In this document: positions 13,163-40,360 of the stretch, in pieces
How positions within the stretch are numbered: position 1 is the stretch's first letter
Layout of the letters: each line of letters starts with the position of its first letter
DNA from: Hemiscyllium ocellatum
Lineage: Eukaryota
Direction of reading: 5' to 3'
NCBI RefSeq assembly: GCF_020745735.1
Contig: NC_083420.1
Coordinates: forward strand, 17,856,001 to 17,920,000
DNA length: 64,000 nt
Made by a program: the position numbers and the translations under genes
The notes under the pieces: generated by a model
Databases searched by the model: none
What the model was told of the DNA's origin: nothing
Seen by the model: the letters and a program-made list of their open reading frames with translations, nothing else

Positions 13163-13675
13163 ACCCACCCAGACCATTTCCCTCTGAATGATGCACCTAA
13201 CACTATGGGCAATTTAGCATGGCCAATTCACCTGACCTGCACATCTTTGTACTGGAGGAAACTGGACGGATTTAGGAAACTGGACTGGACAGGAGGAAAC
13301 TGGAGCACCCGCAAGAAACCCACGAGCAGGGGATTCACATTAATATTCTTTTGCGCTGGGTGTGACGTAGGGTCACGAGATCTGATTGGTACCATTTTGA
13401 AACCACACTACAATCCTCCTGGCACCTGCCTTCCAGTTCATCACCATCCTCTCCCAGAAAACCCCAAAATGCTGCTAACTCTCCTGCTGGAGAACCAGGC
13501 TGCTCACCATCTCCCCAGTTACGGTCACCTCCACAATCTCACACCCTCGGCAAAAGGGAAAGTGAAGTGGCGAGCATGAACGTGCAAACTCCACACAGAC
13601 AGTCGCCTGAATCAAAATCTGGCTCCCTGGCGCTGTGAGGCAACAATACTAACCACTGAGGCACCGTGCCACCCG
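13163..13675 (-). mobile_element. HE1 SINE lacking its own tail and carrying a 247-bp foreign insert
   Basis: Reverse HE1 motifs on both sides of 13331-13577. Confidence 0.85.
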
Positions 13676-14574
13676 AGCCTAATGTCTGTCAGAGGCAAAG
13701 TTCCAGAATCTATCATTAAGGAGATTATAGCAGGACACTTAGAAAATCAAACATGATTTTTGTTTAGAAAGGGAAGTTATATTTGACTGTGTTTAAGAAC
13801 TCTATTCAGGGACATTGTTTAAAAATGAGGTTTCCCAGTAAAAATGAAGGTGACAAGTAATTATTTCTTTAACCATTGAAAGTATTGGGAACTTTCTGCT
13901 TTAGAAATTGGCAAAAGCAGGGTCATTGAATATTTTGAAGACAGAAGTAAATAGATTCTTGACTAACAATGGAGCCAGTGCTAATCAGGGCTAGATGGGA
14001 AGAGGGATTATATCCACAATTAGACCATCCATGATCCTAATGGTAAAACAGGACAGATGGGCTGATTTGCTTGCAACTGCTCCTAACTTGAATGTTCATA
14101 ACAAAATATTTCACCTAGTGGGTTTAAATACTATGCATTTCTGAATTATTCTGTTTGCAAATGAAATAACTTTTAAAATGATATAAATTTAAGAATATAA
14201 TTGAAATGTCATGTATATTTCTACTCAGCTCTCTCTTGCTGTCTCTCCTCTACCTCACCTTTCTCCATCACTGATCAGTCTTGTTGCTGACTCTCCCATT
14301 CACTCACTGTCTTGTTTGCCAAGTCTATGCTCGCCACTTCACTTTCCCTTTTGCTGAGGGTGTGAGATTGAGAGTGTGAACTGTAACTGGGGAGATGGTG
14401 AGCAGCCTAGTTCTCCAGCAGGGGAGTTAGCAGCATTTTGGGGTTTTCTGGGAGAGGATGGTGATGAACTGGAAGGCGAGTGCTAGGAGGATTGCAGTGT
14501 GGCTTCAAAATGGTGCGAATCAGATCTCATGAACCTACGTCACATCCAGCGCAAAAGAATATTAATGTGAATCC
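13331..14574. repeat. Inverted repeat pair 13331-13577 / 14327-14574
   Basis: Reverse-complement match over about 247 bp, roughly 93% identity by eye. Confidence 0.95.
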
Positions 14575-14639
14575 TCGAACCTAAACATGACTACATTGAA
14601 ATTACAGCATTCAATCAAAGCAACTTAAAATGAGGCACC

Positions 14640-14815
14640 CTAACACTTATTTAAGAAATATTTAGATGTACACTTGTGATGCCAAGGGACAGAAGGCTTT
14701 GTGCCAAGTGCTGGAAAGTGTGATTAGAATAAGTAGCTGTTTCTGACCGATGCAGACTTGATGGGCTGAACGGCTCTTTTTCATGCTGTAGACCTCAATG
14801 ACTGTATGACTCTAA
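14640..14815 (+). mobile_element. CR1 3' end fragment
   Basis: ATTTAAGAAATATTTAGATG...GCAGACTTGATGGGCTGAACGGC with a short repeat tail. Confidence 0.65.
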
Positions 14816-15362
14816 CTCAAGGGTTTTGTCAAGTCTGACTGAGTCTAACATAACTGCACTGGCAGCTGACATACAAAATAACTTGTTGGCATTCTGTATC
14901 CTTGTTCGAACATTATTTAAACAATCATGATGTCTCTTTAATGTATGACAGAAGCTGAAAGAAAGTAAATTGATGTATTGGATTTGCTTGAAGTTGTCTT
15001 TGCCTGAAAGCCACTGCCTAACAAAAAAATGTTAATGAATTTCTGCTTTTACTCAGTGCCAAAACGAAATCTCTGTGAATAGTAACAGTTCACATGCACT
15101 GCTGGCAAGACTTTACAGAAAGAGGAAACCTGTTCTTCACTTTGACAAAGCACATCCAAACCTTATTGGGTAACTTTGTATGGAATGTTTCCATTAAGTA
15201 TTTAGATAGTTTGTTCACTGAATGATTTATAGAATTTTTTAACAGGTTGAGATGAATTTTTAAAAAGATATTTAATAGTTACAGATCAGTCGACTTCTGA
15301 TGGTTCCTCATTAGGAGACCATGGAATAGCAGTCACTGGGCTCGTAAGTTAGACTCTTCTAG

Positions 15363-15948
15363 GAGAAAGTGAGGAGATGCTGGAGATCAGAGCTGAAAAT
15401 GTGTCGCTAGAAAAGCGCAGCAGGTCAGGCAGCATCCAAGGAGCAGGAAAATCGGCGTCTTGGGCATGAGCCCTTCTTCAGGAATGAGGAGAGTGTGCCA
15501 AGCAGGCTAAGATAAAAGGTAGGGAGGAGGGATTTGGGGGAGGGGCGTTGGAAATGCGATAGGTGGAAGGAGGTTAAGGTGAGGGTGGTAGGCCGGAGTG
15601 GGGGTGGGGGCGGAGAGGTCAGGAAGAAGATTGCAGGTTAGGAAGGTGGTGCTGAGTTTGACTGGAAAAGCGCAGCAGGTCAGAACTCAGCACCACCTTC
15701 CTAACCTGCAATCTTCTTCAACCTCTCCGCCCCCACCCCCACTCCACGTATCACCCTCACCTTAACCTCCTTCCACCTATCGCATTTCCAACGCCCCTGC
15801 CCAAGTCCCTCCTCCCTACCTTTTATCTTAGCCTGCTTGGCACACTCTCCTGATTCCTGAAGAAGGGCTCATGCCTGAAACATCGATTCTCCTTCTCCTT
15901 GGATGCTGCCTGACCTGCTGCGCTTTTCCAGCAGCACATTTTCAGCTC
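15363..15948. mobile_element. PLE long inverted-repeat hairpin (arms about 265 bp)
   Basis: Arms 15390-15658 and 15684-15948; hammerhead-like CTGAAGAAGGGCTCATGCCTGAAAC near 15857; degenerate flanking duplication TAAGTTAGA. Confidence 0.9.
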
Positions 15949-16049
15949 ATAAGTTAGATTACCTAGTTAATGCTGTAGGACTACAAGTTCAAATCCCATC
16001 ATGACAACATTTCAAATCAATTAGTGAATAGATCTAGAATTGAAAGCTA

Positions 16050-16375
16050 TCTTGCATGAAGTTCTGGTCTGCCTGCTGTGGGAAGGATGTTGTGAAATTT
16101 GCAAGGGTTCAGAAAAGGTTGCCAGGGTTGGAGGGTTTGAGCTATAGGGAGAGGCTGAATAGGCTGGGGCTGTTTTCCCTGGGGTGCCAGAGGCTGAGGG
16201 GTGACCTTATGGAGGTTTATAAAACCATGACGGGCATGGATAGAGTGAATAGATAAGGTCTTTTCTCTGGCGTGAGGGAGCCCAAAACTAGAGGGCATCA
16301 GTTTAAGGTGAGAAGGGAAAGATTGAAAAGGGACCTAAGGGGCAGCTTTTTCAGGCAGAGTGTGGCACGTATATG
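16050..16375 (+). mobile_element. CR1 ORF2 C-terminal fragment
   Basis: LPGLEGLSYRERLNRLGLFSL..RLRGDLMEVYK. Confidence 0.9.
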
Positions 16376-16689
16376 ATTAGGTGAGATTCCCTACAGTGTG
16401 GAAACAGGTCCTTCAGCCCAACAAGTCCACACCGACCCTATGAAGAGCAACCCACCCAGACCCATTCTCCTACATTTACCCCTGACTAATCCATGTAACA
16501 CTGCGGGCAGTTTAGAATGGCCAAGTCACCTGACCTGCACATCTTTGGACTGTGGGAGGAAACCAGAGCACCTGGAGGAAACCCACGCAGACACGGGTAG
16601 AATGTGCACACAGACAGTTGCCCGAGATGGGAATTGAACCCGGGTCCCTGGCGCTGTGAGGTAGCAGAGCTAACCACTGGGCCACCGTG
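16376..16689 (-). mobile_element. HE1 SINE
   Basis: Full reverse HE1 including B-box GGGTTCAATTCC. Confidence 0.9.
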
Positions 16690-17114
16690 GAATTGTAATT
16701 GTGAAGATAGCATCAATTGTTGTGGTATCCCATTTGGTTCACAAATGCCCTTTAGGAAACAAAATCTGCTGTTTCTTACCTGATCTAATGCGCATGACCT
16801 CAGAGCCACAGCAATGTGGTTGACTTTCAATGCCTTAGAAATGGTTTCGCAATTTACTCAGTTCAAGAGCAAATAGGGATGGGTAGCACATGCTGGCCTT
16901 ACTACTGATGTCCATGTCCCAAGAAAGAATAAGGATAAGAAAAGTTAATTTATGCACCTGAAATTGAAGCCCTGGTTCCTTCAGTACAATTGATATGATT
17001 CCTCTTCAGTTTTGTGAAGAGCCTTGTCATTAGCCATACAGAATAAAAACTATGGGCCAGATCTAGCAGACAAAATAATGAATTTAATGCCATTTGTTAT
17101 CATTTCTGTCAGAC

Positions 17115-17247
17115 AGATTTTTAATCAGTCGGGGAATCCAGGGTTATGGGAAGAAGACTGAAAGGCAGAGTTGAGAATGATCAGATCAGCCATGATCATT
17201 GAATGGCAAAGCAGAATTGATGGGCTGAAAGGCCTACTGCACCTAAT
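17115..17247 (+). mobile_element. CR1 3' end fragment
   Basis: AGATCAGCCATGATCATTGAATGGC..GATGGGCTGAAAGGCCTACT. Confidence 0.65.
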
Positions 17248-17854
17248 GGACTTTCTCAATCCTTCAGCAATTTGTGACAAATAATACAGTAATCGGGCAA
17301 GATTTTAACTCATTGAAAACTCACTTTCTGAGTTATGGTTAGGTCTACATTGTGGGTTGGGAATTGATACAAGTTGGTACCTGATTTTCACTGCCCTTCT
17401 GTTAGCTTCAGAAAAACCATAGTGCAGATGAAAGCTCTTTGTGAGAGAATTTGTGTATTCATTGTCATCTGAAGTCACCCGCAGAGAGGGCTTGTATTCA
17501 GTTGCATAAGGACATTTTTTAATTATATAATTTTATGTTCCTACAATGGCATTGAACTTCTCTAGTTTAACCTCTCTAATTCAGAAAGGGAATATTTAAG
17601 GCTGCCTCCTTGTTGCTGCATGGAAATTGTTCTCAAGAGATTTTCAAGATTTAAAATGTTCTTCAGTTTGTTACTTTTCCTTTCTCTTTCTCTTTCTCTT
17701 CCTCATCATCTGTACCCTCTTTTCTCTTGAACACACTTTTTGTCATAAATGTGACTGTAATTCTACCTCTTCCCTTCTATGTGCTGTTTCTTTCTCAGTG
17801 CTTGAGTCTGACTAGTTAAGGAAGTAGGCTGTTTGTTCCTTCATTCCATTTGGA

Positions 17855-18920
17855 TAGCAGGACTGGTTCGTAGGTAGAAGACAGAATGTCGTGGTGAAGG
17901 GTTGCTATCCAGACTGGAGGTCTGTGACCAGTGGTGTGTCACAAGGATTGATGCTGGGTCCACTACTTTTTGTCATTTATATAAATGATATGGACATGAA
18001 TATAGGACGTGTGGTTATTAAGCAGACAACACCAAAATTAGAGGTGTAGCGGACAGCAAAGAAGATTACCTCAGATTATAACAGGATCTTGATCAGATCG
18101 GCCAATTTGCTGAGGAGTGGCAGATGGAGTTTAATTTAGATAAATGCGAGGTGCTGCATTTTGGGAAAGCAAATCTCAGCAGGACTTATACACTGAATGG
18201 TAGGTCCTGGGAATGTTGCTGAACAAAGAGACCTTGGAGTGCAAGTTCATAATTCCTTGAAATTAGGGTCACAGGTAGATAAGATAATGAAGAAGGCGTT
18301 TGGTATGCTTTCCTTTAATGGTCAGTGCATTGAGGATAGGAGTTGGGAGGTCATGTTGCAGCTGTACAGGACATTGGTTCAACCACTTTTAGAATACTGT
18401 GTGAAATCATGGTTTTCCTGCTATGGGAAGGATGTTGTGAAACTTGAAAGGGATCAGAAAATGTTTTAAAAGTTTGCCATCATTGAAGGATTTGTGCTAT
18501 AGGGAGAGGTTGAATAGGCTGGGTCTGTTTTCCCTGGAGTGACGGAGGCTGAGGGATGAGCTTATGGAGGTATATAAGATCATGAGGGACATGGATAGGA
18601 TGAGTAGACCAAAGTCTTTTCTCTAGGGTGGAGAGTCCAAAATTAGATGGCATAGGGTTTAGGGGGAGAGATTTAAAAGGGACCTAAGGTATAACTTTTT
18701 CACACAGAGGATGGTGTGTGTATGGAATGAGTTGCCAGAGGAAGTGGTGAAGGCTGGGGCAAGTATAACATTTAAAAGGCATCTGGATGGGTATATGAGG
18801 GTTTAGAGGGATATGGGCTAAGCGCTGGCAAACGGGACTAGGTTGAGTTGGGATACCTGATTGGTGTGGACGAGTTGGTTCGAAGGGTCTGTTCCCATGG
18901 TGTACATCTCTATGCTTCTA
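17855..18920 (+). mobile_element. CR1 LINE, 5'-truncated (RT end, C-terminus, tail)
   Basis: EQRDLGVQVHNSLK..KKAFGML..YRTLVQPLLEYCV; tail CGAAGGGTCTGTTCCCATGGTGTACATCTCTATG. Confidence 0.9.
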
Positions 18921-19064
18921 TTCACCAAGGTCTGAGGTGCTCCATCGCCAGCTTTCCTGCCCAGCTGAAGGCTGAAGACGAAATCTAACCAGGGGAGCAG
19001 CAACACCCGCATTTATAATTTATAGCAGATATTTGACAATGATTCTCGAAATAATAGAGAGTTC

Positions 19065-19430
19065 TGACAACTGCCCAATCCATCACGCAAGCCAACCTTC
19101 CATCCATTGACTCCAATCATTTCCCGTTTCCTCAAGAAGGCAGCCAACATCATGAAGGACCCCTCCCACCGCAGTTATAATCTCTTCCAACCTCTTCTGC
19201 AGACTGACGATACAAAAGTTTAAACACACATACCAAAAGATTCAAGAACAACTTCTTCTCCTGAATGGACCTCTCAAATTTTAAATTTACTGTGTATCTT
19301 GCTCTTTGTGTACCTTCTGTGCAGGCATAACCTTGTATTCCTTGCTCTGTGCTATTACCCTAATGCACTTTGTACGGTGTGATCTGCCTGTACTGCACAC
19401 GAAACAGAATTTCACTCTTGTATCTACAAT
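19065..19430 (+). mobile_element. Rex1/Babar-like LINE 3' fragment
   Basis: Translates across frameshifts to AQSITQANLPSIDS..KAANIMKDPSH..YNLFQPL..YKSLNTHTKRFKNNFF, a Rex1-type C-terminus. Confidence 0.7.
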
Positions 19431-19909
19431 GCTGGGTAGTTTAGAAATAGCATGTCAACAATTGTACCAGCTAGAGATGGGGCTTATTAATAACAAATGA
19501 GGTATTGAACTGATCTGTTAGGTTGAAAGATAAGCAGATTGCAATAAGTAGATTGCAGGGGAAGTGTGGGGAGGATGGATGTTAATCAGCTTCTTAAATG
19601 TGCATTCTGTGTTAAGAAACAGCAAGTTGAAAGTTTAGATTGCTTATCAAAATTAAGAGGTACCAAGTGTAGGCATTCTCCTAACATGGAGGTTAGTGGA
19701 TCCCTGGGAATGACCACATCATGTCCTATGGGATGCAGTCATGTTCTAAGACAAGGTGATGGAAACTCTGAGCAGGTTGTAGTTGCCTGAATCTTTAATT
19801 AAATCACTGAGTGGAAATCTAAGAGTTTTATTTTGTGCTTTCCTTTACATACCGATCTTCTTCCCCCTTTCTTCCAGTTCAATTATTTTCCCCCTTTTTT
19901 AAAGCCATG

Positions 19910-20150
19910 AATGGGTTTGATTGAGTGATTAAAGAAACCCTATTTCCAGGGGTAGAAAGGTCGGTAGCCAAGGGTCACAGGTTTAAGGGTAAGAATCAGA
20001 GAGAAGGTGAAGAGTTTTTTTTAATGCAACTACTTCCTATACTCAAGAATACACTGTCTAATAGGATGCTGGAAATAAATTCAGTCAGAGCTTTCATCAG
20101 TGAATTGGGTAGTACCTGTAGGATTAAAAACAAATGTCAGGATATAGGGA
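19910..20150 (+). mobile_element. Degenerate CR1 3' fragment
   Basis: ETLFPGVERSVAKGHRFK. Confidence 0.6.
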
Positions 20151-20237
20151 AAGAGGAGGAAATGAGATGCTGTCCCTTCAGCTTTCTCAACAAAACCTAG
20201 ACTGGGTACGGACCTTATGGAATACCACAGCTTGGAA

Positions 20238-21025
20238 CGTAAGAATGACCTGTCTTTTCAGTCGCTTGCCATTTCAATGCATTGTCTTGCTGTCATGTTA
20301 ACATCCCTGTCCTAACCTGCTGCAGTGTTCCAGCAAAGGCCAGCATAAGCTGTAGAAACAGCACCTCAGCTTTTGCTTCGGCACTTTTCAGTCCTCAGGA
20401 CTTGAAATTGAGTTGGACTCCTTCAGACCATGAACACCATCCTCCATTTTGATTATAAACCCTTCCCCACCATCCCCACAATCAGATCTTGTTTCACAAT
20501 TAAACCAGTGCTATTTGCTTGTGTTAGGTCCATATCCCTCCATACCAACCCATCCATGTACCTGTCTAAATGTTTCTTAAATGACAAAATTGTACTCACT
20601 TCCAGCAGTACCTCTGTCAGCTGAGTTGTCCTATTATCTGTTATTCACAGCTATCATTAACTATGCTCTTCATCTGTATCTCTCCCCTCTTACCATTCGC
20701 ATTTGAGAAGATCTTTTCCTTTTGCACTGGACACTTTCACCATCTGTTACATTTGCTGCACCTAGTCCTTTTTTAACAGTATAAAAAATGTTACTGGGCT
20801 CTCATTGATGTGGTGGCAGTGTCCCTACCTCTGAGCCAGGAGGTCCAGGTTGAAATCCCATTGTCTCCATAACATCTGAACAGTTTGATAATATCTAAAA
20901 ACCATCCCGCTCCTAGCCCCCTGCAGTTCCAAAGAAGAGTCCTATTCGACTCAAAATGTTAAATCTTTTTCCCCCTCCACAGGTGCTACCAGGCTCAATG
21001 AGTATCTCCAGCATTTTCTGATCTT
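20238..21025 (+). mobile_element. Degenerate PLE: GIY-YIG endonuclease C-terminus plus terminal repeat
   Basis: 20261-20432 translates VACHFN..HVNI.VL / LLQCSS..HKL*KQHLSFCFGTFQSSGLEIELDSFR; decayed hammerhead AAGAAGAGTCCTATTCGACTCAAAATG near 20931; interrupted by a CR1 piece (20525-20625) and a SINE head (20797-20890). Confidence 0.65.
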
Positions 21026-26544: not shown

Positions 26545-26900
26545 ATGGAGAATAGTGATAAGACAGGGAAGAGGAGGAATTTCTTCTCTCAGGGGAATTC
26601 TTTAATACAGAGGGCTGTCAAGGTTAGGTGATTAAGTATACCCAAGGCTGAGATGGACATATTTAAATCAGGAATTTTCAAACAGATAAGCTACTAACTT
26701 CTGACCAACATGCCAACTCTTCAGGTTGGTCATGGAATCTTTTGATGCCCATCTGAAACAGCAGTTGGGGTCTTGGGAATCAGGAGTTATGGGGCAAAAG
26801 CAGGTAAATTGAGGATTATCAGAACAGCCATGATCTCACTGAATGGTGAAAAACATTCGATGGCTTGAATGACCTACTTCTGCTCCTACGTTTTATGGTC
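26545..26900 (+). mobile_element. CR1 3' fragment carrying a 111-bp foreign insert
   Basis: GAGGAGGAATTTCTTCTCTCAG...CAAGGCTGAGATGGACA|insert|GGAATCAGGAGTTATGGGG...CAGCCATGATCTCACTGAATGG. Confidence 0.75.
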
Positions 26901-27860
26901 TTGTTGTATAGTTCTGAACTATTGTTGTGGTCAGAGGAGAGTATGATTTTTCCCAAATCTGTCTGGGAATCTCTATTGGTTGGGATTTTTAATAAGTTTG
27001 TTGCCTGTCTTTGGAGATCACGTGGTTTTGAGCAAGGGTTGGGTTTGCATATTGTGCTTTTCCAGGCAGGACACTTGGGAGGGACAGGCTACATGGATTA
27101 GTGGTCATTTCCTGTCTGTAGAGCTCAGTTGGTTATCACAGTATACTTTGAGGGATGTGTCTACTCTTCATTGATGCAGCAATGAGCCTTATGCAAGGCT
27201 GCTCTTCACCACTAAAACGGTCCCCTGTCATAATGTAGCCTGAATTTTTCATGGCTGCAGCAATAGTTGGCTACACTTTTCATTGGCGAACAGTGAGTCT
27301 GACAAGATACTGCCGTGTTCTTCCTCAAGGCTGGGGTAATGAGCCCTGTCGGACATAGCTATCCTTCCACATTTATGACCAGAGCAATGGTCCCTGTGTG
27401 ATATTATTCTGTTCTCTGTGGATGGAACAATGTGCCGTCAATTGCTCTGGTTCACTGACCAAGTGGCCGTATGTTTCTAAGAGTAACAGCGTGAAATGTG
27501 GTAATTCCAACATTGTAACAGCTATTCCTGTTTTAATCTCAAGGAAAGGGATATCTTAATGACAATTAAAATTTGTGTGTGCCTCAAACAACACTTGGCA
27601 ACCACATTGCATGCTGTCCAATGAAAAAACCTCCACAATCAGCTGCTCAACAAAACCTTATAATGGGCATCTATCAATGCTTTAGTAAGACAGAAGTTTC
27701 AAGTCATAGTTCACAGACCTGCGCATAGTATCCAAACTGACACACCAATGCAGGGCCCAAGACCCCTGTTTCAGATGGGCATGAAAAGATTCCATGACCA
27801 ACCTGAAGAGTTGGTATATTGGTCAGAAGTTATTAGATTATCTGTTTGAAAATTCCTGAT
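26667..27860. repeat. Inverted repeat pair 26667-26777 / 27756-27860
   Basis: Reverse-complement match with 5 substitutions and one 6-bp indel. Confidence 0.93.
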
Positions 27861-28387
27861 GAAACTGTTCCATCCTGCGAAGGCAATCTATCCTCATTGT
27901 GCTGTCATTTCTAATGTAAAAATAATACAGGGATATTGTGTAAAAGATACTAAACTGACTTTCAGAATGTGCACCGAATCTTCCATGATGGCTCCCTGAA
28001 GTCACATGACTGTTCTCAGCTAGCTAAACAGGCAGTTACCACAGCATCAATTATGATGAACACTACAAGGGGTCCTTCGAAAGCGGTTTCATTCTGCCAA
28101 TTCCTCCAACTGACTGTGCCCCACCCCCATGGCCAGTTTGGCCAGCAGCCCTGCTTGATGACTGACCAGACCCCTGCCCATGCCTTGTGAAGCTCCCCAC
28201 CTACAGATCCCTTGGCCATTTACACCTGACCAGCAAGACTGACCGTGGTCAAATCCCCAGGTAGCAATGAGATGGATCCCCTCAGCCTGACTGCCCCAAG
28301 AGTTGTTTGACCTTGCCCAAGCGCCTGGACTGATAGCCGACATTGCCTTCGACTGATTGTCCTGGGTATCCCCTGACTGTCCTCTTT

Positions 28388-28820
28388 ATAGAGTCATAGA
28401 GATATACAGCATGGAAACAGACCTTTCGGTCCAACCTGTCCATGCCGACCAGATATCCCAACCCAATCTAGTCCCACCTGCCAGCACCCAGCCATATCCC
28501 TCCAAACCCTTCCTGTTCATATACCCATCCAAATGCCTCTGAAATGTTGCAATTGTACCAGCCTCCGCCACATCCTCTGGCAGCTCATTCCATACACGTA
28601 CCACCCTCTGTGCGAAAAAGTTGCCCCTTAGGTCTCCTTTTATATCTTTCCCCTCTCACCCTAAACCTATGCCCTCTAGTTCTGGGAAAACCCCAGGGAA
28701 AAGACTTTGTCTATTTATCCTATCCATGCTCCTCATAATTTTGTAAACCTCTATACGGTCACCCCCTCAGCCTCCGACGCTCCTGGGAAAACATCCCCAG
28801 CCTGTTCAGCCTCTCCCTCT
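28388..28820 (-). mobile_element. CR1 3' fragment
   Basis: VRVWNELPEDVAEAGTIATFQRHLDGYM; ERLNRLGMFSQERRRLRG. Confidence 0.9.
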
Positions 28821-28972
28821 TGACCTGACTGAATGCTACTAGCCCTCTATCTGGAGACATGGCAACTCGGTTAATGCTCACACTGTGTCTTTGCCTCATG
28901 AGTTGCTGGAACATATTGGCATGAGATGGACATAGCACTATGCTGTACAGCAACGTGTCCAGCCTCTGGAGT

Positions 28973-31564: not shown

Positions 31565-32995
31565 AGTACATAGAACAATACAGCACAGTACAGGCTCTTC
31601 AGCCCATAATGTTGTGCAGAGTATTTACCTTAAGCTAAGATCAACCTAACATCCCTCAATTTACTGCCAGCAGTTGCTTAGATGTCCCTACTGTATCTGA
31701 CTCTATTACCATCACTGGCAGTGCATTCCACACACTCACCACTGTCTGTGTAAAGAACCTACCCCTGACATCTCCCCTAAACCTTCCTCCAATCACCACT
31801 GTCTGGGTGAAGAAAATCCTCATCTCAGTTCGCAGATGGCCTACTCCATATCCATATCCATGACCCAGCTCTGGTGTCTCCAGTCCTCAAGAACATCCTT
31901 TCTGCATTTACCCTGTCTAATCCTGTTAGGTTTCTACAAGGTTACCCTCATTACGAACCCTCGTGACAGCCATTTCTGGCTTGGGGAAAAGTCTCTGGCT
32001 ATCTACTCTATCTATGCCTTTCGTTACCTTGTACACCTCTATCAAGTTCACCTCTCTTCCTTCTTCTCTCCAGTGTGAAAAGCCCTAGCTCAACCTCTCT
32101 TCATAAGACAAGCCCTCCAATTCAGGCAGCATCCTGGTAAATCTCCTCTGCACCTCTCTAAAGCATCTACATCCTTCCTATAGTGAGGCGACCAGAACTG
32201 GACACAATATTCCAAATATGGTCTAACGGGAGTTTTATAGAGCTGCAGGAAAATCTCGCAGCTCTTAAACTCAATCTGCTTTTAATGAAAGCCAAAACAC
32301 AATACGCCTTCTTAACAACCTGAGCATCTTGGTGGCAACTTTGAGGGATATATGGATGTGGACCCCAAGATCCCACTGTTCTTCCGCACTACCAAGAATC
32401 CTGTCTTTAACCCTGTATTCAGCTTCAAATTTGACCTTTCAAAATGAATCACTTTTTATTTATCCAGGTTGCACTCCATCTGTCACTTCTCAGCCCAACC
32501 CTGCATCCTGTCAATGTCTTGTTGTAGCCTGCAACAGCCCTCAACACTATCTACAACTCCACTGACCTTTGTGTCATCGGCAAATTTACTAACCCACCCA
32601 CCCTTCATCCAGTCCATTTCTAAAAACTACAAAGAGCAGAGGCACAAGAACAGATCCCTGCAGGAAACCACTGGTCATCGACCTCCGGGCGGAATACTTT
32701 CCATCCACTACCACACGCTATCTTCGTTCAGCCAGCTAACTCTGTATCCAGACAGCCAAATGTCCTGGTATCCCCTACCTCCTAACTTTCTGAATGAGCC
32801 TACCGTGGGGAACCTTATCACATGCCTTACTGAAATCCATATACACCACATCCACTGCTCAACCTTTATCAACTTGTCTTGTTGCATCCTCAAAGAACTT
32901 AGTAAGGCTTCTGAGGAATGACCTGTCCCTCACAAAACCATGCTGACTATCTTTAATCAAACTACGTTTTTCCGAATAGTCATAAATCCTGTCAT
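31565..32995 (-). mobile_element. CR1 LINE, 5'-truncated and degenerate
   Basis: Frameshifted reverse RT motifs (TTTGTGTCATCGGCAAATTT encodes KFADDTK); ACATAGAAC tail. Confidence 0.9.
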
Positions 32996-33313
32996 GGCCT
33001 GACAATTTTCACTGTTTGCACTCATTGATTAAGGGTTTGATTTCAATGATTATTCCTAAATTAGAAAATAAATTTCTGGAATAGAATGGTAAAATGTTAT
33101 GAATGGTAACAAAATGTGTATGCAGTCAACCTTTTAACTTTAGAAATTCTATCAACATTCAGAAGCCGCTCAATACTGAATAGGGAACATCTTGAAAGGC
33201 ACATCCAGTACTTTGCTTTCCATTGAATTCTTTATCTGTTGACAGTTGATTGTACAATTATCGCTTATATCAATGATCTTGTTGGGATCACATGTGAAGT
33301 AGTGTATTCTGAG

Positions 33314-33418
33314 AAAGTTAAAAATCACACAACATCAGGTTATAGTCCAACAGGTTTAACTGGAAGCACACTAGCTTTCGGAGCGACGCTCCTTCACCAG
33401 GTGATTGTCAATCATGAC
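33314..33418 (-). mobile_element. PLE (second family) stub with 9-bp TSD, inserted into another PLE stub
   Basis: TATTCTGAG at 33305-33313 and 33419-33427; minus-strand CTGGTGAAGGAGCGTCGCTCCGAAAGCTA. Confidence 0.8.
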
Positions 33419-33555
33419 TATTCTGAGGAAGGGTGACTCGATCTGAATTGTGAACTCTGCTTTCTCTCCACAGACGCAGTCAGGCCTGCTGAGCCTTTCC
33501 AGCAATTGCTGTTTGTGTTTCTGATTTACAGCATTCTCAGTTCTTTCGGTTTTTA
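33419..33555 (+). mobile_element. PLE terminal stub (same family as 4471)
   Basis: CTGAGGAAGGGTGACTCGATCTGAA..TCTCTCCACAGACGC..CCAGCAATTGCTGTTTG. Confidence 0.6.
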
Positions 33556-33561
33556 TGGATC

Positions 33562-34078
33562 ATTGTGTGCAGTTTGGTCTCCTTATCTGAGGAAAGATGT
33601 TCTGGTTCTGCAGGGAGAGCATTACCGGACTGATTTCTGGGTGAGGAGACTGACATCTGAAGAAAGACTTGATCGGTTTGTACTATATTCACTGGAGTTT
33701 AGAAGAATGAGAGTGATTTTGTAGCAACTTATAAAATTCTAACAGGAGGAGACAGGAAGGATGTTCTTGAGGACTGGAGACACCAGAACTGGATATGGAT
33801 ATGGAGTAGGCCATCTTAGAAATGAGATGAGGAATTTCTTCACCCAGAGAGTGGTGAGCATGTGGAATTCCATCATGGAAAGCAGTTGAGCCAAAACATT
33901 GAATACTTCCAAGGACTTGGATCTAGTTCTTAGGCATCAACTGCTAAAGGGGTCAAAGGGTGTAGTGAGAAAACAGGAACAAGCTAGTCAGTGGGATGAT
34001 CAGCCATGATCATATTGAATGGCAGAGCAAGCTCAATGGGCCAAATGGACTATTCCTGCGCCTGTTTTCTATGTTTCA
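33562..34078 (+). mobile_element. CR1 3' fragment
   Basis: WSPYLRKDVL..EERLDRFVLYSLEFRRMR; tail TTTTCTATGTTTC. Confidence 0.85.
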
Positions 34079-34339
34079 GTGCACCATTGTTAAGTATTTG
34101 TACCGTGAAAACCACTGAACACACTGCTGTCAGAAGATTGTATTGGGCAGAGAGCACTCAACTGAAAATTTCAAAAATTGGAAATGTGTTTGTTTGACAC
34201 ACCTAATAGCAGTTATGAACCTAGGTGGTAAGATGAGAGTTAAGAAACAGATCAGGTTTGAGCTAATTGACAAGTTTCACAGAAACAGAAAGTGCAGTGG
34301 TATAGAAAGTGTCTATCCGGACCATTGTATCATCACCAA

Positions 34340-34920
34340 CTTTGTGGGAACTTTAACATGATGCTAATGTTCCCCCCACCCACCTTTCACTGTAAATCCT
34401 ACGCAAGTTAGTATCCAAATAATCATCTCATTGCCTCATCTTGAATACCTCAATTGAACCTGCCTCTACCATACTTCCAGCCAGTGCGTTTCAGATTCCA
34501 ATTAGTTGCTGTGAGAGAAACATTTTTCTCACCTCTGATTTGCTTCTTTTGTAAAACATTTTAAAACTGTACTGTCTGATTCTCAGTCCATTTACGAGTA
34601 GAAACTGTTTCTCCCTATTGACTCCGTTCAGACCCTTAATGATTTTGAAAATTACTACAAAAGTCTTCCAAAAGCTGAATGGTCTCCTCGTGTACCTATC
34701 AAGAATTAAGTCCCATTTAAAGAAAATATAACTAACAGAAGAGTCTCTTGTGCGTGTTAAACTTGTAGTGAACCTATCACACTTAGAGGTCCGTGTAGTA
34801 TCTGGGTCTCCATACCAGAAGCAGTGTCTGGAGGTCCTTGCAAAGTACAATACTCATTTGCTAGGATGTTACCCAAACTGAGAGACTGATGCTATTAGTA
34901 AAGATTAAACGACCTGTTCC
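34340..34920. mobile_element. Degenerate CR1 fragments in both orientations
   Basis: Minus-strand FKIIKGLNGVNREKQFLL; plus-strand remnant near 34780-34915. Confidence 0.55.
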
Positions 34921-34974
34921 TCTTTCAATGGCAGTTGTGACACATTGCACATCACCCTACTTTTTCTGGGGGCT

Positions 34975-35345
34975 GCGAGTTCAAGTCCCACTCCAGGACT
35001 TAGATACAAGAATAATCATAAGAGGGGACACCCCAGTCCATTATAGAGAGGACACTGCACTGTCTATCAGTTGCAATGTTAAAAATGAAACGATGTGTAC
35101 CTGTTGAGAGAGGTGCAACAAATCCCATGGAAAAGAACAGGGATTTTGCCCTGGCATTCTTGACAATGTGTTTTCCTCAACTGATCTCACAGAAACAGAT
35201 CATTGGGCCGTTATTCCATTGCTTTGTGGGAGCTTGCTGTGTGTAAGTCGGTTGCTATGTTTCTATATCATGACAGTAACCTCACTTTGACAACACGTTG
35301 TTGGCTCTAAAGCATTTTAGAATGTCATGTGTATCACTGAAATAC
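34975..35345 (+). mobile_element. Deu-domain SINE (SacSINE1/AmnSINE-like)
   Basis: GTTCAAGTCCCACTCCAGGACTT head; AATCCCATGG..CCTCAAC..AACAGATCATTGG..TGTGGGAGCTTGCTGTG Deu core; TTGGCTCTAAAGCATTTT tail. Confidence 0.7.
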
Positions 35346-35349
35346 ATTT

Positions 35350-35725
35350 CTCTGGTGATCTGATAAAGATCTTTAATGTAATGAAGAAGTAGAGTCGGAG
35401 AATAAATTTCTATTTGTGTGAGGTGCCATAACTAGGGGCTATACTTAAAAAATGAGGTACAAATAAATCATTTAAGGAATGCAGACACAAGAATTCTTAC
35501 ACAGATGAGTAAGAATATTATGCGGGGACCTTACCAACAGGGAGTAGTGGAAGCAAATTTTATGGATGCATTTAAGGGGAAGATAGGTTGACATAAGTGA
35601 AAGCAGGTAGTGGAATGATGTCTTAATAGGGTTAGATGAAGTGAGGTATGAGGAGACACATACAATCATAAATACAGCAGACTAGTTGGTCTGAATGACT
35701 TGTTCCTGTACAGTAGAATTGATGT
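35350..35725 (+). mobile_element. Degenerate CR1 3' fragment
   Basis: GGAGTAGTGGAAGCAAAT..GATGCATTTAAGGGGAAG..GGTCTGAATGACTTGTTCCTGT. Confidence 0.6.
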
Positions 35726-35789
35726 CTCTCAGTCTTAATGATGCATTTCAAGCTGCTGTATTAAAGTGCCAAAGACTATTTTGACTTTA

Positions 35790-35985
35790 ATTCATCCCTC
35801 AAACAGCAGCAGTAAAACAGCTTATCTGGTGACTGTTCACATAACTGTCAGTGAACCCTTGCTGTAGGCAAATGAGCTGCCCCAATACCACAGTGCCTAC
35901 ACGTCAAAAAAAGTGCTTCATTGGATGCAAAGCACTTTAGGATGTTGTGGAGTCATGAATGGCACTATTTCAATGCAAATGTTTC
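35790..35985 (+). mobile_element. Deu-domain SINE 3' part
   Basis: AAACAGCTTATCTGGT..CTTGCTGTAGGCAAAT..CTTCATTGGATGCAAAGCACTTTAGGA. Confidence 0.6.
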
Positions 35986-36271
35986 ATCACATATACAGGA
36001 ATATTATTAAAATAAATTGTATCGGGGAGGGAATGAAGGGGCAGGGTTGTTACTCAGAGACTGTGGAGTGTGCAATGAGCAATGCCAGGGTTGGAGATCT
36101 GGAACAAACATATCTGCTCATCTCGACCCACAAGCAGTGCTGTAAAGACAGTCACCTGTTGATTGCAGACTGTCTTCCCTCCTTTTATTGGTCCAATTTC
36201 CTAAGGACAGGGAATCACCATTGACAGTAATTGAAAATAGAAACTATGTTAGAATGGAGGCATGTTTGTCT

Positions 36272-36392
36272 GTAGTGTTAGGTAAGGGGTAAATGTAGGG
36301 GTATGGGTGGGTTGCGCTTCGGCGGGTTGGTGTGGACTTGTTGGGCTGAAGGGCCTGTTTCCACACTGTAAGTAATCTAATCTAAAAAAAAA
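36272..36392 (+). mobile_element. HE1 SINE 3' part
   Basis: Near-identical to the 3' end of the HE1 copy at 45979; ATCTA tail. Confidence 0.85.
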
Positions 36393-37029
36393 GTAACATC
36401 CTTAAAACCTTTCAACAAGCCATCATCCTCCTGAGAGCAGATTATTCTCCCACCCTCCCCTCCCTCAGTTAAAATCAGAAAATGGGTGAGTTCAAGTATG
36501 CTGGGGTGCTCATTGAACTATTTAGCATGTTTACCTCCCAATGACCACAACCCTAGCACTCCCAGATTTTGGGATCAAAAATTACCTGGCTGTTTTTGTA
36601 TTCAACCACTTTCTTTGCACACTTTTGAGTTCTCAAGCATAAGAGATGGTAAATATTTGCTGTTTGATAGGGAGGGACAGATGGAGGTAGGATGACATCT
36701 CCAGGAATGTAGCCAAAAAGAGTTGGCAATCCTAAGTGTGGCACAAAGTGCCAAGTGAGGCAATTGAAAAAGCACCCAAACATCTATCCAGAATTAGTTG
36801 GGAGGAGCCCAGGGGAGTTGTGGTAGGATGTCAGTATTTATCTGTGAATGAAAGGTATCTGAAAGCTGAATTGTAAAATACTTCACAATATATCGCAACA
36901 CGCACCTGTGGCTGAGTAATATATTCCAAACCAAAGCTCAAGAGGCATCACTCTGGACTAAAATTCCCTAAAGAAGGAGAAGGAATAATCTTTCCCCAGC
37001 TTCCCAGTTGATGTGTTGCTCCTTGCTGA

Positions 37030-37215
37030 TTGAAACAACAGCAACGTTTTATTTTCTAAAGTGCCTTTGACAAAACAACATTTCCCAAAATGCATCACAA
37101 AAAATACATCAGAGCTTAATATTTCACTGAGCCCCAGAGGGAGATATTAGAATTAGATAAAAAGAGGTAGGTTTTAAGGAATATTTCAAAGGAGGAAAAT
37201 GATGTAGGAAAGTAA
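37030..37215 (-). mobile_element. L2-like LINE 3' end
   Basis: AAAGAGGTAGGTTTTAAGGA, reverse of the 3770-type segment. Confidence 0.55.
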
Positions 37216-37624
37216 AGAAAGTATGTTTTAATATGAGAAATTACAATTTTGTTAACTGACACACATATGAGTTCAATTACATACAGTGAAATATAAACTA
37301 TTAAAATAACTTATGAATTTTGGGTGTTAGTCAAGGTTAAGTGAGTGCACTTCAGCATCAAATATACATGTTAGAGGCAGAAAATGTTGTGTATCAGATA
37401 ATACAACTTTTGTTCTGAATCAAAATCCAGCTTGAGAAAGTGTCTAATGTCAGGATTGTAAGGCATCACATCTCCACATCACATATCCATTTAACATCCA
37501 CATTATCCATTTAAAATCAACATTTCATGTTGTCTTGTGTACTGTTCTGTCTGAGAAGCTATTTCTCAATCTTCATTTCATATTTATAATGTCCAAAATA
37601 TAAGCAAAACGTTGAACCAAAAAA

Positions 37625-38075
37625 GAGTCATAGAGATGTACAGCACATAAACAGTCCAACCTGTCTATGCCGACCAGATATCCCAACCCAGTCTAGTCCC
37701 ACCTGCCAGCACCCAGCCCGTATCCTTCCAATCCCTTCCTATTCATATACCCATCCAGATTCCTTTTAAATGTGCAAATGTACCAGCCTCCACCACTTCA
37801 TCTGGCAGCTCATTCCATACTCGTACCAACCTCTGCATGAAAATGTTGTCCCTTAGGTCTCTTTTGCATCTTTCCCCTCTCACCATAAACCTATGCCCTC
37901 TAGTTCTGGACTCCCCAACCCCAGGGAAAGGACTTTGTCTATTTATCCTATCCATGCCCCTCATAATTTTGTAAACCTCTATAAGGTCACCCTTCAGCCT
38001 CCGACGTTCCAGGGAAAACAACCCCAGCCTGTTCAGCCTCTCTGTATTGCTCAAGTCCTCCAACCCTGGCACATC
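37625..38075 (-). mobile_element. CR1 3' fragment
   Basis: MPGLEDLSNTERLNRLGLFSLERRRLKGDLIEVYKIM..VWNELP. Confidence 0.92.
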
Positions 38076-38896
38076 CTTTTACCAAGCCATGCTTTCTACC
38101 CAAACTATTTGTTTATTAACTCATTCATTCATAGGATGTGATGCCACTAGTAAGGTCAACATTTATTGGCCATCCTTAATTATTCTTTGGAAAGTGATAA
38201 GCTGCCTTCTTGAACCATTGCATTATTTGTGATGTGGGTATAATCAAATGTTATTAGGGATAGAGTTCTAGGATGAGTACAGCTTTGTTTATTTTACATC
38301 CAGAGTGAAGTGGCTGACCACATTCATAAGGACAGCTTCTGGGAGCCTGCTTGTAGATTTCACAAAATAACCGAGGATAACTCTGGGATATCAATCTAAC
38401 TTTACAACATCCAATATTCAACTAAGGCCAGTTGACAGTGTATCTCACCATATTTTGTAGAACATTTAAGAATCGACATTTGTATTCTACCCATCAATGT
38501 TCTGTTCTTCATGAGATTTTTGTTAATTAAAAAAAAGTTGATTAATTTAATATTGAGTAAAATAATTGCATTGATTTATTACCAGAAATACAAAGACAAT
38601 TGCTCCTTGCTACTGTGCTAGCCAATTGTAATTTACATTTTTTAACTGTAATAAGTATCATCAATTTGTTCAGTCAAGATTTGATTGACCTGGGTACTAA
38701 TGAAAAGTCTCCTGGTGAATAATGATGAAGTGGGATAGTTCAGTATTCTTGATGTCGAACAATTGCATGAAAGTGAGGATTAATCTGAAATGTTGAGGTA
38801 AAAGATTGGAACCATTTGAATTGAGTGATATTGGATGACCTCAATGCCTGACTGAGGGCACGTGACACTTTTGGAGGATGCTGTTTCTTGGGTAAG

Positions 38897-39103
38897 ACAA
38901 AAAAAACTGCAGATGCTGGAATCCAAGGTAAACAAGCAGCAGGCTGGAAGAACACAGCAAGCCAGGCAGCATCAGGAGGTGGAGAAGTCAATGTTTTGGG
39001 TGTAACCCTTCTTCAAAATCTTCATTCCAAAATGTTGACTTCTCCACCTCCTGATGCTGCCTGGCTTGCTGTGTTCTTCCAGCCTCCTGCTTGTTCCTTG
39101 GAT
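38897..39103. mobile_element. PLE terminal hairpin (arms about 78 bp)
   Basis: 38921-38999 pairs with 39027-39103; minus-strand GAAGAAGGGTTACACCCAAAAC decayed hammerhead. Confidence 0.85.
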
Positions 39104-39660
39104 AAGGCCTTGAAGTGATGATCCATCAGCTCTCTCAGCTGGGTGTAAATGTTCCTATGGCACCATTCAAAGTTAGTTTTCCCGATGTACCTAGCTTCTT
39201 AACAAAGCTATTCCATTGCAAGAAAACACTTGCATTAATGTATCACCTTTCAGAGTTTCATTCAGTGAAATACGTTCAAAATGTATTAATTTGTTTTATT
39301 CATTTGTGGGAGGTGGGCGTCGTTGGCCGGCCAGCATTTCTTGCCCATCCCTGGTTGCTCATGAGAAGGTGGTGGTGAGCTGCCTTCATGAACTGCTGCA
39401 GTCCACCTGCTGTGGGTTGACCCACAATTCCAGTAGGAAGGGAATTCCAGGAATTTGACCCAGCAACAGTGAAGGAACAGCGATATATTTCCAAATCAGG
39501 ATGGTGAGTGGTTTGGAGGTAAACTTGCAGGGGATGGTGTTCCAATGGATCTGCTGTCCTTGTCCTTCGAGCTGCAAGTGGGTTTGGAAATTGCTGTATA
39601 AAGATCTTTGGTGAATTTCTGCAGTGCATCTTGTAGATGGTACACACTGCTGCTACTAAG

Positions 39661-40360
39661 TTTCAGTGGTGGAGCGAGTGGATGCTTATGGATGTAGTGC
39701 CAATCAAGCGGGCTGCTTTGCCCTGGATGGTGTCAAGCTTCTTGATTGTTGTTGGAGCTGTACTCATCCAGGCAAGTGGGAGTATTTCATCACACTCCTG
39801 ACTTGTGCCTTGTCGATGGTGCACAGGCTTTGGGGAGTCTGGAGGTGAGTTACTTGCCACAGTATTTCTAGCCTCTGACCTGCTGTTGTAGCCACTGTGT
39901 TTATGTGGTGATTCGAGTTGAGTTTCTGATCATTGGTAATACCCCAGGATGTTGATAGTGGGGATTTAGTGATTGTAACACCATTGAATCTCAAAGGGCA
40001 ATGGTTAGATTGTCTCTTATTGTTGATGGACACAGCCTGGCATTTGTTTAGTGTGAATGTTATTTGCCACTTCTCAGCACAAGCCTTGATATTGTTCAGA
40101 TCTTGTTACATTTGAACATGGACTGCTTCAGTATCTGAGGAGTCATGAATAGTGCTGAACAGAGCATTCCTTCCCCTGCTGACAGAGCAGGGAGAGGAAT
40201 GGTTGGTGAAGGTTCCGGGTTTTAGATGTTTCCGTAAGAACAGAGAAGATGGCGAAAGTTTGGTGGGGGGGGGGGGTAGTTTGGTGTTGATAGTGAAGGA
40301 AAAAGCAGCCCGCTTGATTGGCACTACATCCACAAGCATCCACTCGCTCCAGCACTGAAA
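39661..40360. repeat. Inverted repeat pair 39661-39719 / 40302-40360
   Basis: 57 of 59 bp reverse-complement identity. Confidence 0.93.

What the first reader, a model, noticed from the sequence alone, without database searches (positions are those of the whole stretch)
13331..40360. Four independent inverted, locally templated insertions within 27 kb
Seen: four repeats each contain a foreign insert that is the reverse complement of nearby DNA: 13331-13577 from 14327-14574, 26667-26777 from 27756-27860, 31793-31945 from 33721-33857, and 40302-40360 from 39661-39719. All four are inverted, with donors about 0.6-1.8 kb away. None has a TSD or tail, and each replaces some host bases. Known: microhomology-mediated template switching (FoSTeS/MMBIR, Pol-theta end joining) and RT template jumps produce such scars. 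Inference: this density and uniform geometry suggest a recurrent lineage-wide process. In three of four cases the donor lies beyond the host element's 5' end, which would fit capture of target-flank DNA during retrotransposition; the 26.7-kb case does not fit.
Basis: partly seen in the sequence, partly recalled or inferred. Interest (0 to 1): 0.8.

Follow-up and report, generated by a model that had tools for sequence, protein, structure and literature searches.

The report
Inverted copies of nearby DNA inside transposons
Four old transposon copies in this shark-like genome each carry a 60-260 base patch copied backwards from DNA 0.6-1.9 kb away; these look like scars of a known error-prone break or replication repair process rather than of retrotransposition, and the only unusual feature is how many lie in one small region.

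Summary
All four inverted pairs exist at the stated coordinates, with 3.4-6.7% substitution divergence between arms. A fifth pair lies at 425-507/1309-1392.

In each of the four cases one arm interrupts a transposon, and other copies of that transposon lack it:
- Case 1: a tRNA-derived SINE.
- Case 2: a LINE ORF2 tail.
- Case 3: LINE copy C.
- Case 4: LINE copy B, where the patch bridges a deletion of about 0.88 kb.

None has a target-site duplication or a tail. Junctions show 0-12 nt of microhomology.

Public contigs show that the case 2 donor is single-copy and the core of the case 3 arm is low-copy. The case 1 and case 2 inserts are present in independent individuals and in a related species. 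They are therefore neither assembly errors nor chance neighbours of dispersed repeats.

All five low-copy local pairs in the window are inverted and none is direct. Distant pairs split 23 inverted to 27 direct.

Best reading: fold-back or template-switch synthesis at breaks or stalled forks in transposons that were already in place. This kind of event is known. It is seen here at longer range than published scans search, and at a notable local density.

Every insert is internal to its host, and the case 1 SINE looks about three times older than its insert. First readers and one follow-up agent of this scan noted inverted flank copies elsewhere in this genome, mostly beside Penelope-like elements. 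No such element adjoins the inserts here.

The parts
13334..13577 (.). Case 1 insert: a 244 nt inverted copy of 14327-14571, inside a minus-strand tRNA-derived SINE
   Evidence: The SINE reads ...CAGGGGA | insert | GAACGTGCAAAC..., which is contiguous in the family consensus. Arm-specific 31-mers are present in organism A study P6 (share 1.00) and in organism B (0.29).
13163..13688 (-). Host SINE of case 1 (tRNA head at the high-coordinate end), interrupted by the insert
   Evidence: Alignment with 7 other window copies. A-box and B-box motifs are visible in the reverse complement. It is ~10% diverged from the consensus.
14314..14574 (.). Case 1 donor. Positions 14314-14326 are partly complementary (about 9-10 of 13) to SINE bases 13578-13589, a junction microhomology
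   Evidence: There is no other copy in the window.
26652..26777 (.). Case 2 insert (core 26667-26761, 95% to the donor) inside a plus-strand LINE ORF2 tail
   Evidence: Paralogous host copies join 26592 to 26809. An organism B contig covers 26614-26773 and an independent organism A contig covers 26494-26742.
27756..27874 (.). Case 2 donor, in single-copy DNA
   Evidence: Depth is ~1x across the bins from 27023 to 28359 in all four runs. The flanks show no LINE-tail similarity.
31793..31952 (.). Case 3 insert inside minus-strand LINE copy C. The first ~112 nt come from copy E; the origin of the last ~48 nt is unclear
   Evidence: Joints 31797 to 31958 appear in 3-10 contigs per run, and only 1-5 contigs cover the arm core.
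33706..33857 (.). Case 3 donor, part of the oppositely oriented LINE tail copy E (33556-34072)
   Evidence: The E reading frame contains RNFFTQRVVSMWN.
40302..40366 (.). Case 4 insert: a 65 nt filler bridging a ~0.88 kb internal deletion of plus-strand LINE copy B
   Evidence: The left flank is the EN N-terminal motif and the right flank is the pre-RT region. Reference copy H has an EN Pfam hit at 47599-48045.
39657..39719 (.). Case 4 donor, inside the minus-strand LINE 3' fragment F (39329-40154)
   Evidence: The arm matches it at 94-97%, against 87% for the distant copy at 55838-55900.
425..507 (.). Fifth local inverted pair, left arm. The partner is 1309-1392 (88%). Which arm is the copy cannot be determined
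1309..1392 (.). Fifth local inverted pair, right arm

Best explanation
These are scars of microhomology-primed fold-back or template-switch DNA synthesis in transposon copies that were already in place. They are unrelated to the insertion of those transposons.

Proposed steps (the steps themselves are inferred):
1. A double-strand break or a stalled fork exposes a 3' end.
2. The end pairs through a few bases with the complementary strand 0.6-1.9 kb away on the same molecule. This could be snap-back on resected single-stranded DNA, or a switch to the opposite template at a fork.
3. The end is extended by 60-260 nt and then released.
4. It is joined to the other end by microhomology or end joining, with 0 to ~880 host bases lost.

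Shown here: the inserts are derived, internal, inverted, local, without TSD or tail, and of different ages. Two of them predate a species split.

Not determined: the break, the polymerase, and the direction of synthesis.

The transposon hosts are incidental. Transposons fill most of the window, and their other copies are what make an insertion recognisable.
For: - **Derived state.** Other copies of each host TE lack the insert.
- **Clean insertion in case 1.** Nothing is lost at the insertion point. There are 3 nt (GGA) of microhomology at one junction and an imperfect 13 nt match (about 9-10 of 13), including an exact GCAAAC, at the other.
- **Case 3.** A possible TCACC microhomology.
- **Case 2.** GGGGTCTTGGG and ATCAGGA are shared between host and donor flank.
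- **Case 4.** A 0.88 kb deletion bridged by a 65 nt templated filler, the classic alternative end-joining outcome.
- **No TSD or tail**.
- **Relative age.** The case 1 host SINE is ~10% from its consensus, against ~3% per arm for the insert.
- **Donors.** Unique or low-copy where tested.
- **Orientation bias.** 5 inverted to 0 direct among low-copy local pairs. A fold-back process would explain an excess of inverted copies.
- **Scale.** The loops of 583-1849 nt match fold-back spacers in human inverted duplications: 766 bp to 70 kb, with 2-8 bp of microhomology, and 3 of 21 at inverted LINE or SINE pairs (PMC3907307). Inverted templated insertions are documented in yeast at 2-150 bp (PMC11724301), as human germline MMB-TIs (PMC8421209), and as template-switch mutations up to 318 bp (10.1101/2021.11.26.470150).
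Against: - No orthologous 'transposon present, insert absent' allele was seen. Organism B already carries cases 1 and 2.
- Copies of 60-260 nt from 0.6-1.9 kb away are longer and further than most documented short-range events.
- Microhomology is weak or absent at several junctions (case 3 inner, case 4).
- In case 1 the two terminal primer bases would be mismatched if synthesis started at the 13 nt junction.
- The host consensus for case 2 could not be reconstructed exactly.
- The last ~48 nt of the case 3 arm do not match the proposed donor well.
- The genome-wide copy number of the case 1 and case 4 arms was not measured.
Confidence: 0.62

Rival explanations
1. Reverse-transcriptase template jumping during retrotransposition. 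In this model the LINE, SINE or Penelope RT leaves its RNA, copies the nearby target-flank DNA strand, and the composite is integrated, so insert and host arrived together.
For: - In 3 of 4 cases the donor lies beyond the host's 5' end (my annotation agrees).
- All hosts are retroelements.
- Earlier notes on this genome, including one follow-up (s1-146993), report Penelope-type insertions carrying inverted flank copies. RT-linked capture therefore seems to occur somewhere in this genome.
Against: - No insert sits at a 5' junction. Host sequence resumes beyond every insert, so the RT would have to jump off and back onto the same RNA. In case 1 it would have to return to the very next base.
- The case 1 SINE appears ~3 times older than its insert.
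- The case 2 donor is on the 3' side.
- No Penelope or hammerhead sequence abuts any arm.
- 3 of 4 is not significant (P = 0.31).
Confidence: 0.12
2. Chance neighbours: the arms are fragments of dispersed repeat families that happen to lie close together in opposite orientation, or the inserts came from distant family members rather than from the local partner.
For: - The donors of cases 3 and 4 are LINE sequence with other, more distant copies in the window.
- The tail of the case 3 arm fits donor E poorly.
- The window is very repeat-rich.
Against: - The local partner is the best match in every case: 94-97% against 87% in case 4, and 93-95% against 80-85% in case 3.
- The case 2 donor is single-copy, and the case 3 arm core is covered by 1-5 contigs only.
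- The case 1 and case 2 arms have no other copy in the window.
- All five low-copy local pairs are inverted, whereas far pairs are 23:27.
- Internal TE fragments of 60-160 nt have no transposition route into another TE.
Confidence: 0.06
3. Homeologous recombination or gene conversion between nearby inverted TE copies. This applies mainly to case 3, where host C and donor E are related LINE tails in opposite orientation.
For: - C and E are homologous over the copied region.
- Inverted LINE or SINE pairs are known fold-back and recombination substrates (PMC3907307).
Against: - The tract is out of register. It adds 160 nt (order x, x', y', y) instead of replacing the homologous segment.
- It cannot apply to case 1 or case 2, whose donors are not TE-related to the host.
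- In case 4, donor F and host B share no homologous segment at the junction.
Confidence: 0.08
4. Assembly artefact, for example chimeric fold-back reads.
For: Inverted duplications are a known artefact class of long-read libraries.
Against: - The arms differ by 3-7%, whereas artefacts would be near-identical.
- The case 2 junction is covered by contigs from an independent study of the same species and from a related species.
- Case 1 arm-specific words are present in three studies and two species.
Confidence: 0.01

Closest known systems
Short-range template-switch mutations (TSMs) and MMBIR-type templated insertions (MMB-TIs) in human germline and cancer genomes
   Same: - The inserted sequence is the reverse complement of nearby DNA on the same molecule.
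- There is microhomology at the junctions.
- A few bases may be replaced or deleted.
- There is no TSD.
- The events are inherited as germline variants (10.1101/2021.11.26.470150; PMC8421209).
   Different: Published scans look for templates only within 100 bp (MMBSearch) or within a span of 250 bp or less (TSM filter). The longest reported TSM is 318 bp and most are tens of bp. Here the templates are 583-1849 nt away, the copies are 59-261 nt, and there are 4-5 events in 64 kb.
Fold-back (snap-back) inverted insertions and inverted duplications at double-strand breaks
   Same: - A resected 3' end pairs with itself at a short inverted microhomology and is extended.
- In yeast the new DNA is released and joined to the other end, giving 2-150 bp insertions (PMC11724301).
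- Human fold-back loops are 766 bp to 70 kb, with 2-8 bp of microhomology, and are sometimes anchored on inverted LINE or SINE pairs (PMC3907307). That matches the loop sizes here and the geometry of case 3.
   Different: - In yeast the loop was 41 nt and most inserts were under 14 bp.
- The human cases go on to form dicentric chromosomes and megabase duplications, not a small interstitial patch.
- The events here combine a kilobase loop with a short, resolved copy.
Polymerase-theta-mediated end joining with templated filler (deletion plus insertion scars)
   Same: Case 4 is a deletion bridged by a templated filler copied from a flank. Microhomologies of 0-5 nt are present at several junctions.
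   Different: From general knowledge rather than anything tested here, Pol theta fillers are usually 5-30 nt and copied from within tens of bases of the break. No polymerase can be assigned from sequence alone.
5' inversion by twin priming, and Penelope-like fold-back insertions
   Same: Inverted segments are associated with retroelements. This scan has noted Penelope-linked inverted flank capture elsewhere in this genome (s1-146993).
   Different: - Twin priming inverts the element's own 5' part, produces TSDs, and makes no repeat of flanking DNA.
- Here the inserts are internal and have no TSD. In cases 1 and 2 they copy DNA that does not come from the host element.
- No Penelope or hammerhead sequence adjoins them.

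Membership tests
Template-switch / fold-back templated insertion (TSM, MMB-TI, SD-MMEJ class) | The insert is the reverse complement of a nearby sequence on the same chromosome | tested here: met
   four pairs (plus a fifth), 583-1849 nt apart.
Template-switch / fold-back templated insertion (TSM, MMB-TI, SD-MMEJ class) | The insert is the derived state, i.e. the ancestral sequence lacks it | tested here: met
   The ancestral state was inferred from paralogous TE copies. No orthologous empty site was seen.
Template-switch / fold-back templated insertion (TSM, MMB-TI, SD-MMEJ class) | Microhomology between the break-side sequence and the template at the junctions | tested here: inconclusive
   - Case 1: 3 nt at one junction and an imperfect 13 nt match (about 9-10 of 13, with an exact 6-mer) at the other.
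- Case 2: 7-11 nt candidates, but the host consensus is uncertain.
- Case 3: up to 5 nt at one junction and none at the other.
- Case 4: 1-3 nt.

Template-switch / fold-back templated insertion (TSM, MMB-TI, SD-MMEJ class) | No target-site duplication, no poly(A) or microsatellite tail, and no transposon ends | tested here: met
   Rfam found nothing adjoining.
Template-switch / fold-back templated insertion (TSM, MMB-TI, SD-MMEJ class) | The template lies within the short range used to define the published classes (100-250 bp or less) | tested here: not met
   Templates here are 583-1849 nt away. This is a limit of the published search designs rather than of the mechanism (PMC8421209; 10.1101/2021.11.26.470150).
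Retrotransposition-coupled flank capture (RT template jump at the 5' end) | The captured sequence sits at the element's 5' junction with the target | tested here: not met
   Host TE sequence continues beyond every insert.
Retrotransposition-coupled flank capture (RT template jump at the 5' end) | Insert and host element have the same age | tested here: not met
   For case 1, the SINE is ~10% from its consensus while the arms are 6.2% apart. The consensus is rough (7 copies) and the SINE is CpG-rich. The other cases were not dated.
Retrotransposition-coupled flank capture (RT template jump at the 5' end) | TSDs flank the composite insertion | not tested
   The outer ends of the old, truncated host elements could not be defined well enough.
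DNA transposon or MITE with terminal inverted repeats | The two arms are the termini of one inserted unit, so the host sequence is split around the whole unit and flanked by a TSD | tested here: not met
   The host TE resumes immediately after the first arm, inside the supposed element. There is no TSD.

The most novel reading that the evidence does not exclude
This shark lineage may have an unusually active, or unusually well preserved, kilobase-range fold-back template-switch pathway. It would write 60-260 nt inverted copies of nearby DNA at roughly 80 per Mb, i.e. hundreds of thousands genome-wide. That would make it a major source of new inverted repeats and hairpins, in a class that current detection tools miss because they cap the template distance at 100-250 bp. 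Part of it could be mechanistically linked to the abundant retroelement activity, for example through breaks made by TE endonucleases.
Probability: 0.2. Interest if true: 0.65.

Novelty: new member of a known kind. Interest (0 to 1): 0.4.

Why it matters
If the local density holds genome-wide, kilobase-range inverted templated insertion would be a quantitatively important mutational process in a slowly evolving vertebrate genome. It would be a steady source of long hairpin-forming repeats, which are raw material for small-RNA loci, fold-back instability and inversions.

It would also show that existing template-switch scans, capped at 100-250 bp, under-count the process.

For genome annotation there is a practical point: 'foreign' patches inside transposon copies need not be new elements or chimeric retrotranspositions.

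Taken alone, the four events are ordinary examples of a known repair scar.

Tried and rejected
- **TIR element or MITE.** Rejected, because the host TE resumes between the arms.
- **Inversion with duplicated breakpoints.** Rejected for case 1, because the SINE stays collinear and in the same orientation on both sides of the arm.
- **Case 2 donor as an old inverted LINE tail (gene conversion).** Rejected, because alignment scores of the donor flanks against five LINE tails were at the shuffle null.
- **Better template for the last 48 nt of the case 3 arm.** None found in the window.
- **Shorter local events.** Exact matches of 14-25 nt within 3 kb revealed no additional inverted events beyond the known pairs.
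- **Penelope or hammerhead link.**
  - Rfam at gathering threshold gave no hits over the whole window.
  - Rfam at E <= 1 over 12300-16200 gave only generic long-hairpin matches to plant miRNA models, below threshold and equal on both strands.
  - No tRNA genes were found.
- **Pfam on the 69 aa ORF spanning the left flank of the case 4 arm.** No meaningful hit. The EN assignment for 40149-40301 rests on a motif match to copy H with a weak E-value of 2.8.
- **Fifth pair.** No host TE was recognisable in any frame.
- **Orthologous empty sites.** The single read-laying run showed only paralogous empty copies, plus the filled site of case 2 in organism B. The state of case 3 in relatives could not be read from the rows shown.
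- **Tool errors.** Two literature searches, one paper look-up and two Pfam calls failed on input-format or frame errors and were resent in corrected form.

Full report
**1. Observation**

All four inverted pairs are present at the stated coordinates. Gapped alignment gives:

| Case | Insert arm | Donor | Identity |
|---|---|---|---|
| 1 | 13331-13589 | 14574-14314 | 91.6% over 261 columns |
| 2 | 26652-26777 | 27874-27756 | 87% (core 26667-26761: 95%) |
| 3 | 31793-31952 | 33857-33706 | 80.5% (first ~112 nt: 93-95% in blocks; last ~48 nt: ~60%) |
| 4 | 40302-40366 | 39719-39657 | 94% (59 nt core: 96.6%) |

Substitution divergence between arms is 6.2% (case 1), 5.3% (case 2), 6.7% (case 3) and 3.4% (case 4). 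These are therefore separate events of different ages.

A whole-window self-comparison found a fifth pair of the same type, 425-507 vs 1392-1309 at 88%.

Among all pairs within 6 kb, the only ones whose arms are low-copy in the window are these five, and all five are inverted. Every local direct pair belongs to a high-copy dispersed family. Pairs more than 6 kb apart split 23 inverted to 27 direct. Five of five gives one-sided P = 0.03, which is suggestive on a small sample. A search for shorter exact matches added no further events.

**2. What the hosts are**

The window is vertebrate, TE-rich DNA. It contains a tRNA-derived SINE and RT- and EN-bearing LINEs. Earlier notes of this scan call the genome shark-like.

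*Case 1.*
- The host is a minus-strand tRNA-derived SINE whose head lies at ~13688.
- At least eight other copies in the window run straight through the insertion point.
- Read against them, the SINE is contiguous across the insert...CAGGGGA | 13334-13577 | GAACGTGCAAAC.... Nothing is lost at the insertion point.
- The arm-donor alignment continues 12 nt into SINE sequence. Positions 13578-13589 pair imperfectly with 14314-14326 (about 9-10 of 13), including an exact GCAAAC.
- The other junction shares GGA.

*Case 2.*
- The host is a plus-strand LINE ORF2 tail: ...RRNFFSQ...MDIFKS | arm | GVLGIRSYGAKAG....
- It carries ~103 nt where intact tails have ~27 nt.
- The donor flanks are not LINE-like.

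*Case 3.*
- The host is minus-strand LINE copy C.
- Copies A, B and D lack the 160 nt arm, and about 8-15 host bases are replaced.
- The donor lies in copy E, a related LINE tail in the opposite orientation.
- The tract is out of register (order x, x', y', y), so this is a net insertion rather than in-register gene conversion.

*Case 4.*
- The arm's left flank is the N-terminal motif of a LINE endonuclease domain (40149-40301). Its right flank is the pre-RT region of LINE B (40367 onward).
- The two flanks map ~0.88 kb apart on the fuller copy H, whose EN domain has a Pfam hit at 47599-48045.
- The 65 nt arm therefore bridges an internal deletion.
- The EN motif match is weak statistically (E = 2.8), but it lies exactly where it should.
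- The donor sits inside another LINE fragment, F. The arm matches F at 94-97%, against 87% for a distant copy of F.

No insert has a TSD or a tail.

**3. External data**

Runs exist for the source species (organism A, two studies) and for two relatives, B and C. Organism B differs by ~4% on laid single-copy contigs.
- The case 2 donor lies in ~1x single-copy DNA in all four runs.
- The case 2 arm sits in a dispersed repeat. In 5-10 contigs per run, paralogous copies of that repeat join 26592 to 26809.
- An organism B contig covers 26614-26773 with 8 mismatches and no gaps. An independent organism A contig covers 26494-26742 with none. Case 2 is therefore real and older than the A/B split.
- For case 3, 3-10 contigs per run join 31797 to 31958, skipping exactly the arm. 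Only 1-5 contigs cover the arm core, and they carry donor-type letters, so copy E is the only close relative of the insert.

For case 1, arm and donor share no exact 31-mer, so sampled words are specific to the arm. Organism A study P6 holds all of them. Organism B holds 29%, at or above its 20% background. Case 1 is therefore also older than the A/B split.

Assembly artefact is excluded for cases 1 and 2. It is unlikely for all four, given the 3-7% divergence between arms.

**4. Mechanism**

The anatomy matches microhomology-primed fold-back or template-switch synthesis at a break or a stalled fork:
- The copy is inverted, local and internal.
- There is no TSD or tail.
- Junction microhomology is 0-12 nt.
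- Host loss ranges from none to 0.88 kb.

The direction of synthesis cannot be read from the scars. For case 1 there are two readings:
- The 13 nt imperfect match primed a snap-back.
- GGA primed the synthesis, and the 13 nt match then served for second-end annealing. This reading avoids mismatches at the primer terminus.

The literature supports the kind of event:
- Yeast fold-back insertions of 2-150 bp, made by Pol delta plus end joining (PMC11724301).
- Human germline and cancer MMB-TIs, defined as inverted copies of templates within 100 bp (PMC8421209).
- Human template-switch mutations up to 318 bp, found with a filter of 250 bp or less (10.1101/2021.11.26.470150).
- Fold-back loops of 766 bp to 70 kb with 2-8 bp of microhomology, 3 of 21 anchored on inverted LINE or SINE pairs, in human inverted duplications (PMC3907307).

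The events here combine a kilobase loop with a short, resolved copy. Published scans exclude this regime by design.

**5.

The geometry is as stated: the donor lies beyond the host's 5' end in cases 1, 3 and 4, but not in case 2. The model nevertheless fails on anatomy and timing:
- Every insert is internal to its host.
- Case 1 would need the RT to leave the RNA and return to the very next base.
- The case 1 SINE is ~10% from its consensus, while the two arms are only 6.2% apart. The consensus is rough, so this comparison is approximate.
- Case 4 is a large internal deletion.
- Three of four has no statistical weight (P = 0.31).

First readers and one follow-up agent of this scan reported Penelope-type insertions carrying inverted flank copies elsewhere in this genome. 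I used these only as leads. No Penelope or hammerhead sequence adjoins the inserts here, so at least these events do not depend on such an element.

**6. Verdict**

It is best filed as new examples of a known kind of repair or replication scar.

What remains interesting is quantitative:
- There are five events in 64 kb.
- Templates are at kilobase range.
- Copies reach up to 260 nt.
- Two of the events have persisted since before a species split.

Whether this reflects a lineage-wide high rate needs a genome-wide, cross-species tally, which these tools could not provide.

Unexplained details:
- The poorly matching tail of the case 3 arm.
- Six extra bases (GCAGTT) at the case 2 inner junction.
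- A small reiteration in the SINE just left of the case 1 insert.

Noticed in passing
window 12514-12706 and 15390-15948 (related units at 42334-42428 and 62402-62513): A dispersed hairpin (fold-back) element family. One copy is a near-perfect palindrome of two 96 nt units, 99% complementary with a 1 nt spacer. Another is a 560 nt palindrome (90%) with the same unit at both ends. The unit contains a CTGATGA...GAAA motif, but Rfam gave no hammerhead match, only generic hairpin hits. The two copies bracket case 1 at ~0.6-0.8 kb on either side.
   Followed up: partly
window 28360-28932: An extremely abundant repeat. Summed contig depth is ~10^6 in all four runs and three species, far above the other TEs in the stretch. 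A copy at 37654-38042 is 89% identical.
   Followed up: no
window 43186-43346: A tandem repeat with a 25 nt period, 94-95% identical between copies, just downstream of LINE copy B.
   Followed up: no
window 45688-48253 (minus strand): The most complete LINE copy in the window (copy H), with an Exo_endo_phos_2 hit at 47599-48045 and RVT_1 at 45688-46137. It is useful as an internal reference for the A/B/C family.
   Followed up: partly
window 39329-40154 (minus strand) and 40155 onward (plus strand): LINE fragment F and LINE copy B lie head to head. Their 5' ends abut at ~40154/40155.
   Followed up: no
window 13255-13300: A small internal reiteration (GGAGGAAACTGGAC...GGAAACTGGAC...GGAGGAAACTGGAG) in the host SINE, immediately left of the case 1 insert. 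It may be a slippage footprint of the same repair event.
   Followed up: no
window 5186-5212 and 5461-5487: The only low-copy local direct repeat found: 27 nt exact, 275 nt apart.
   Followed up: no
window 63734-63889: A run of 156 N (gap or masked).
   Followed up: no
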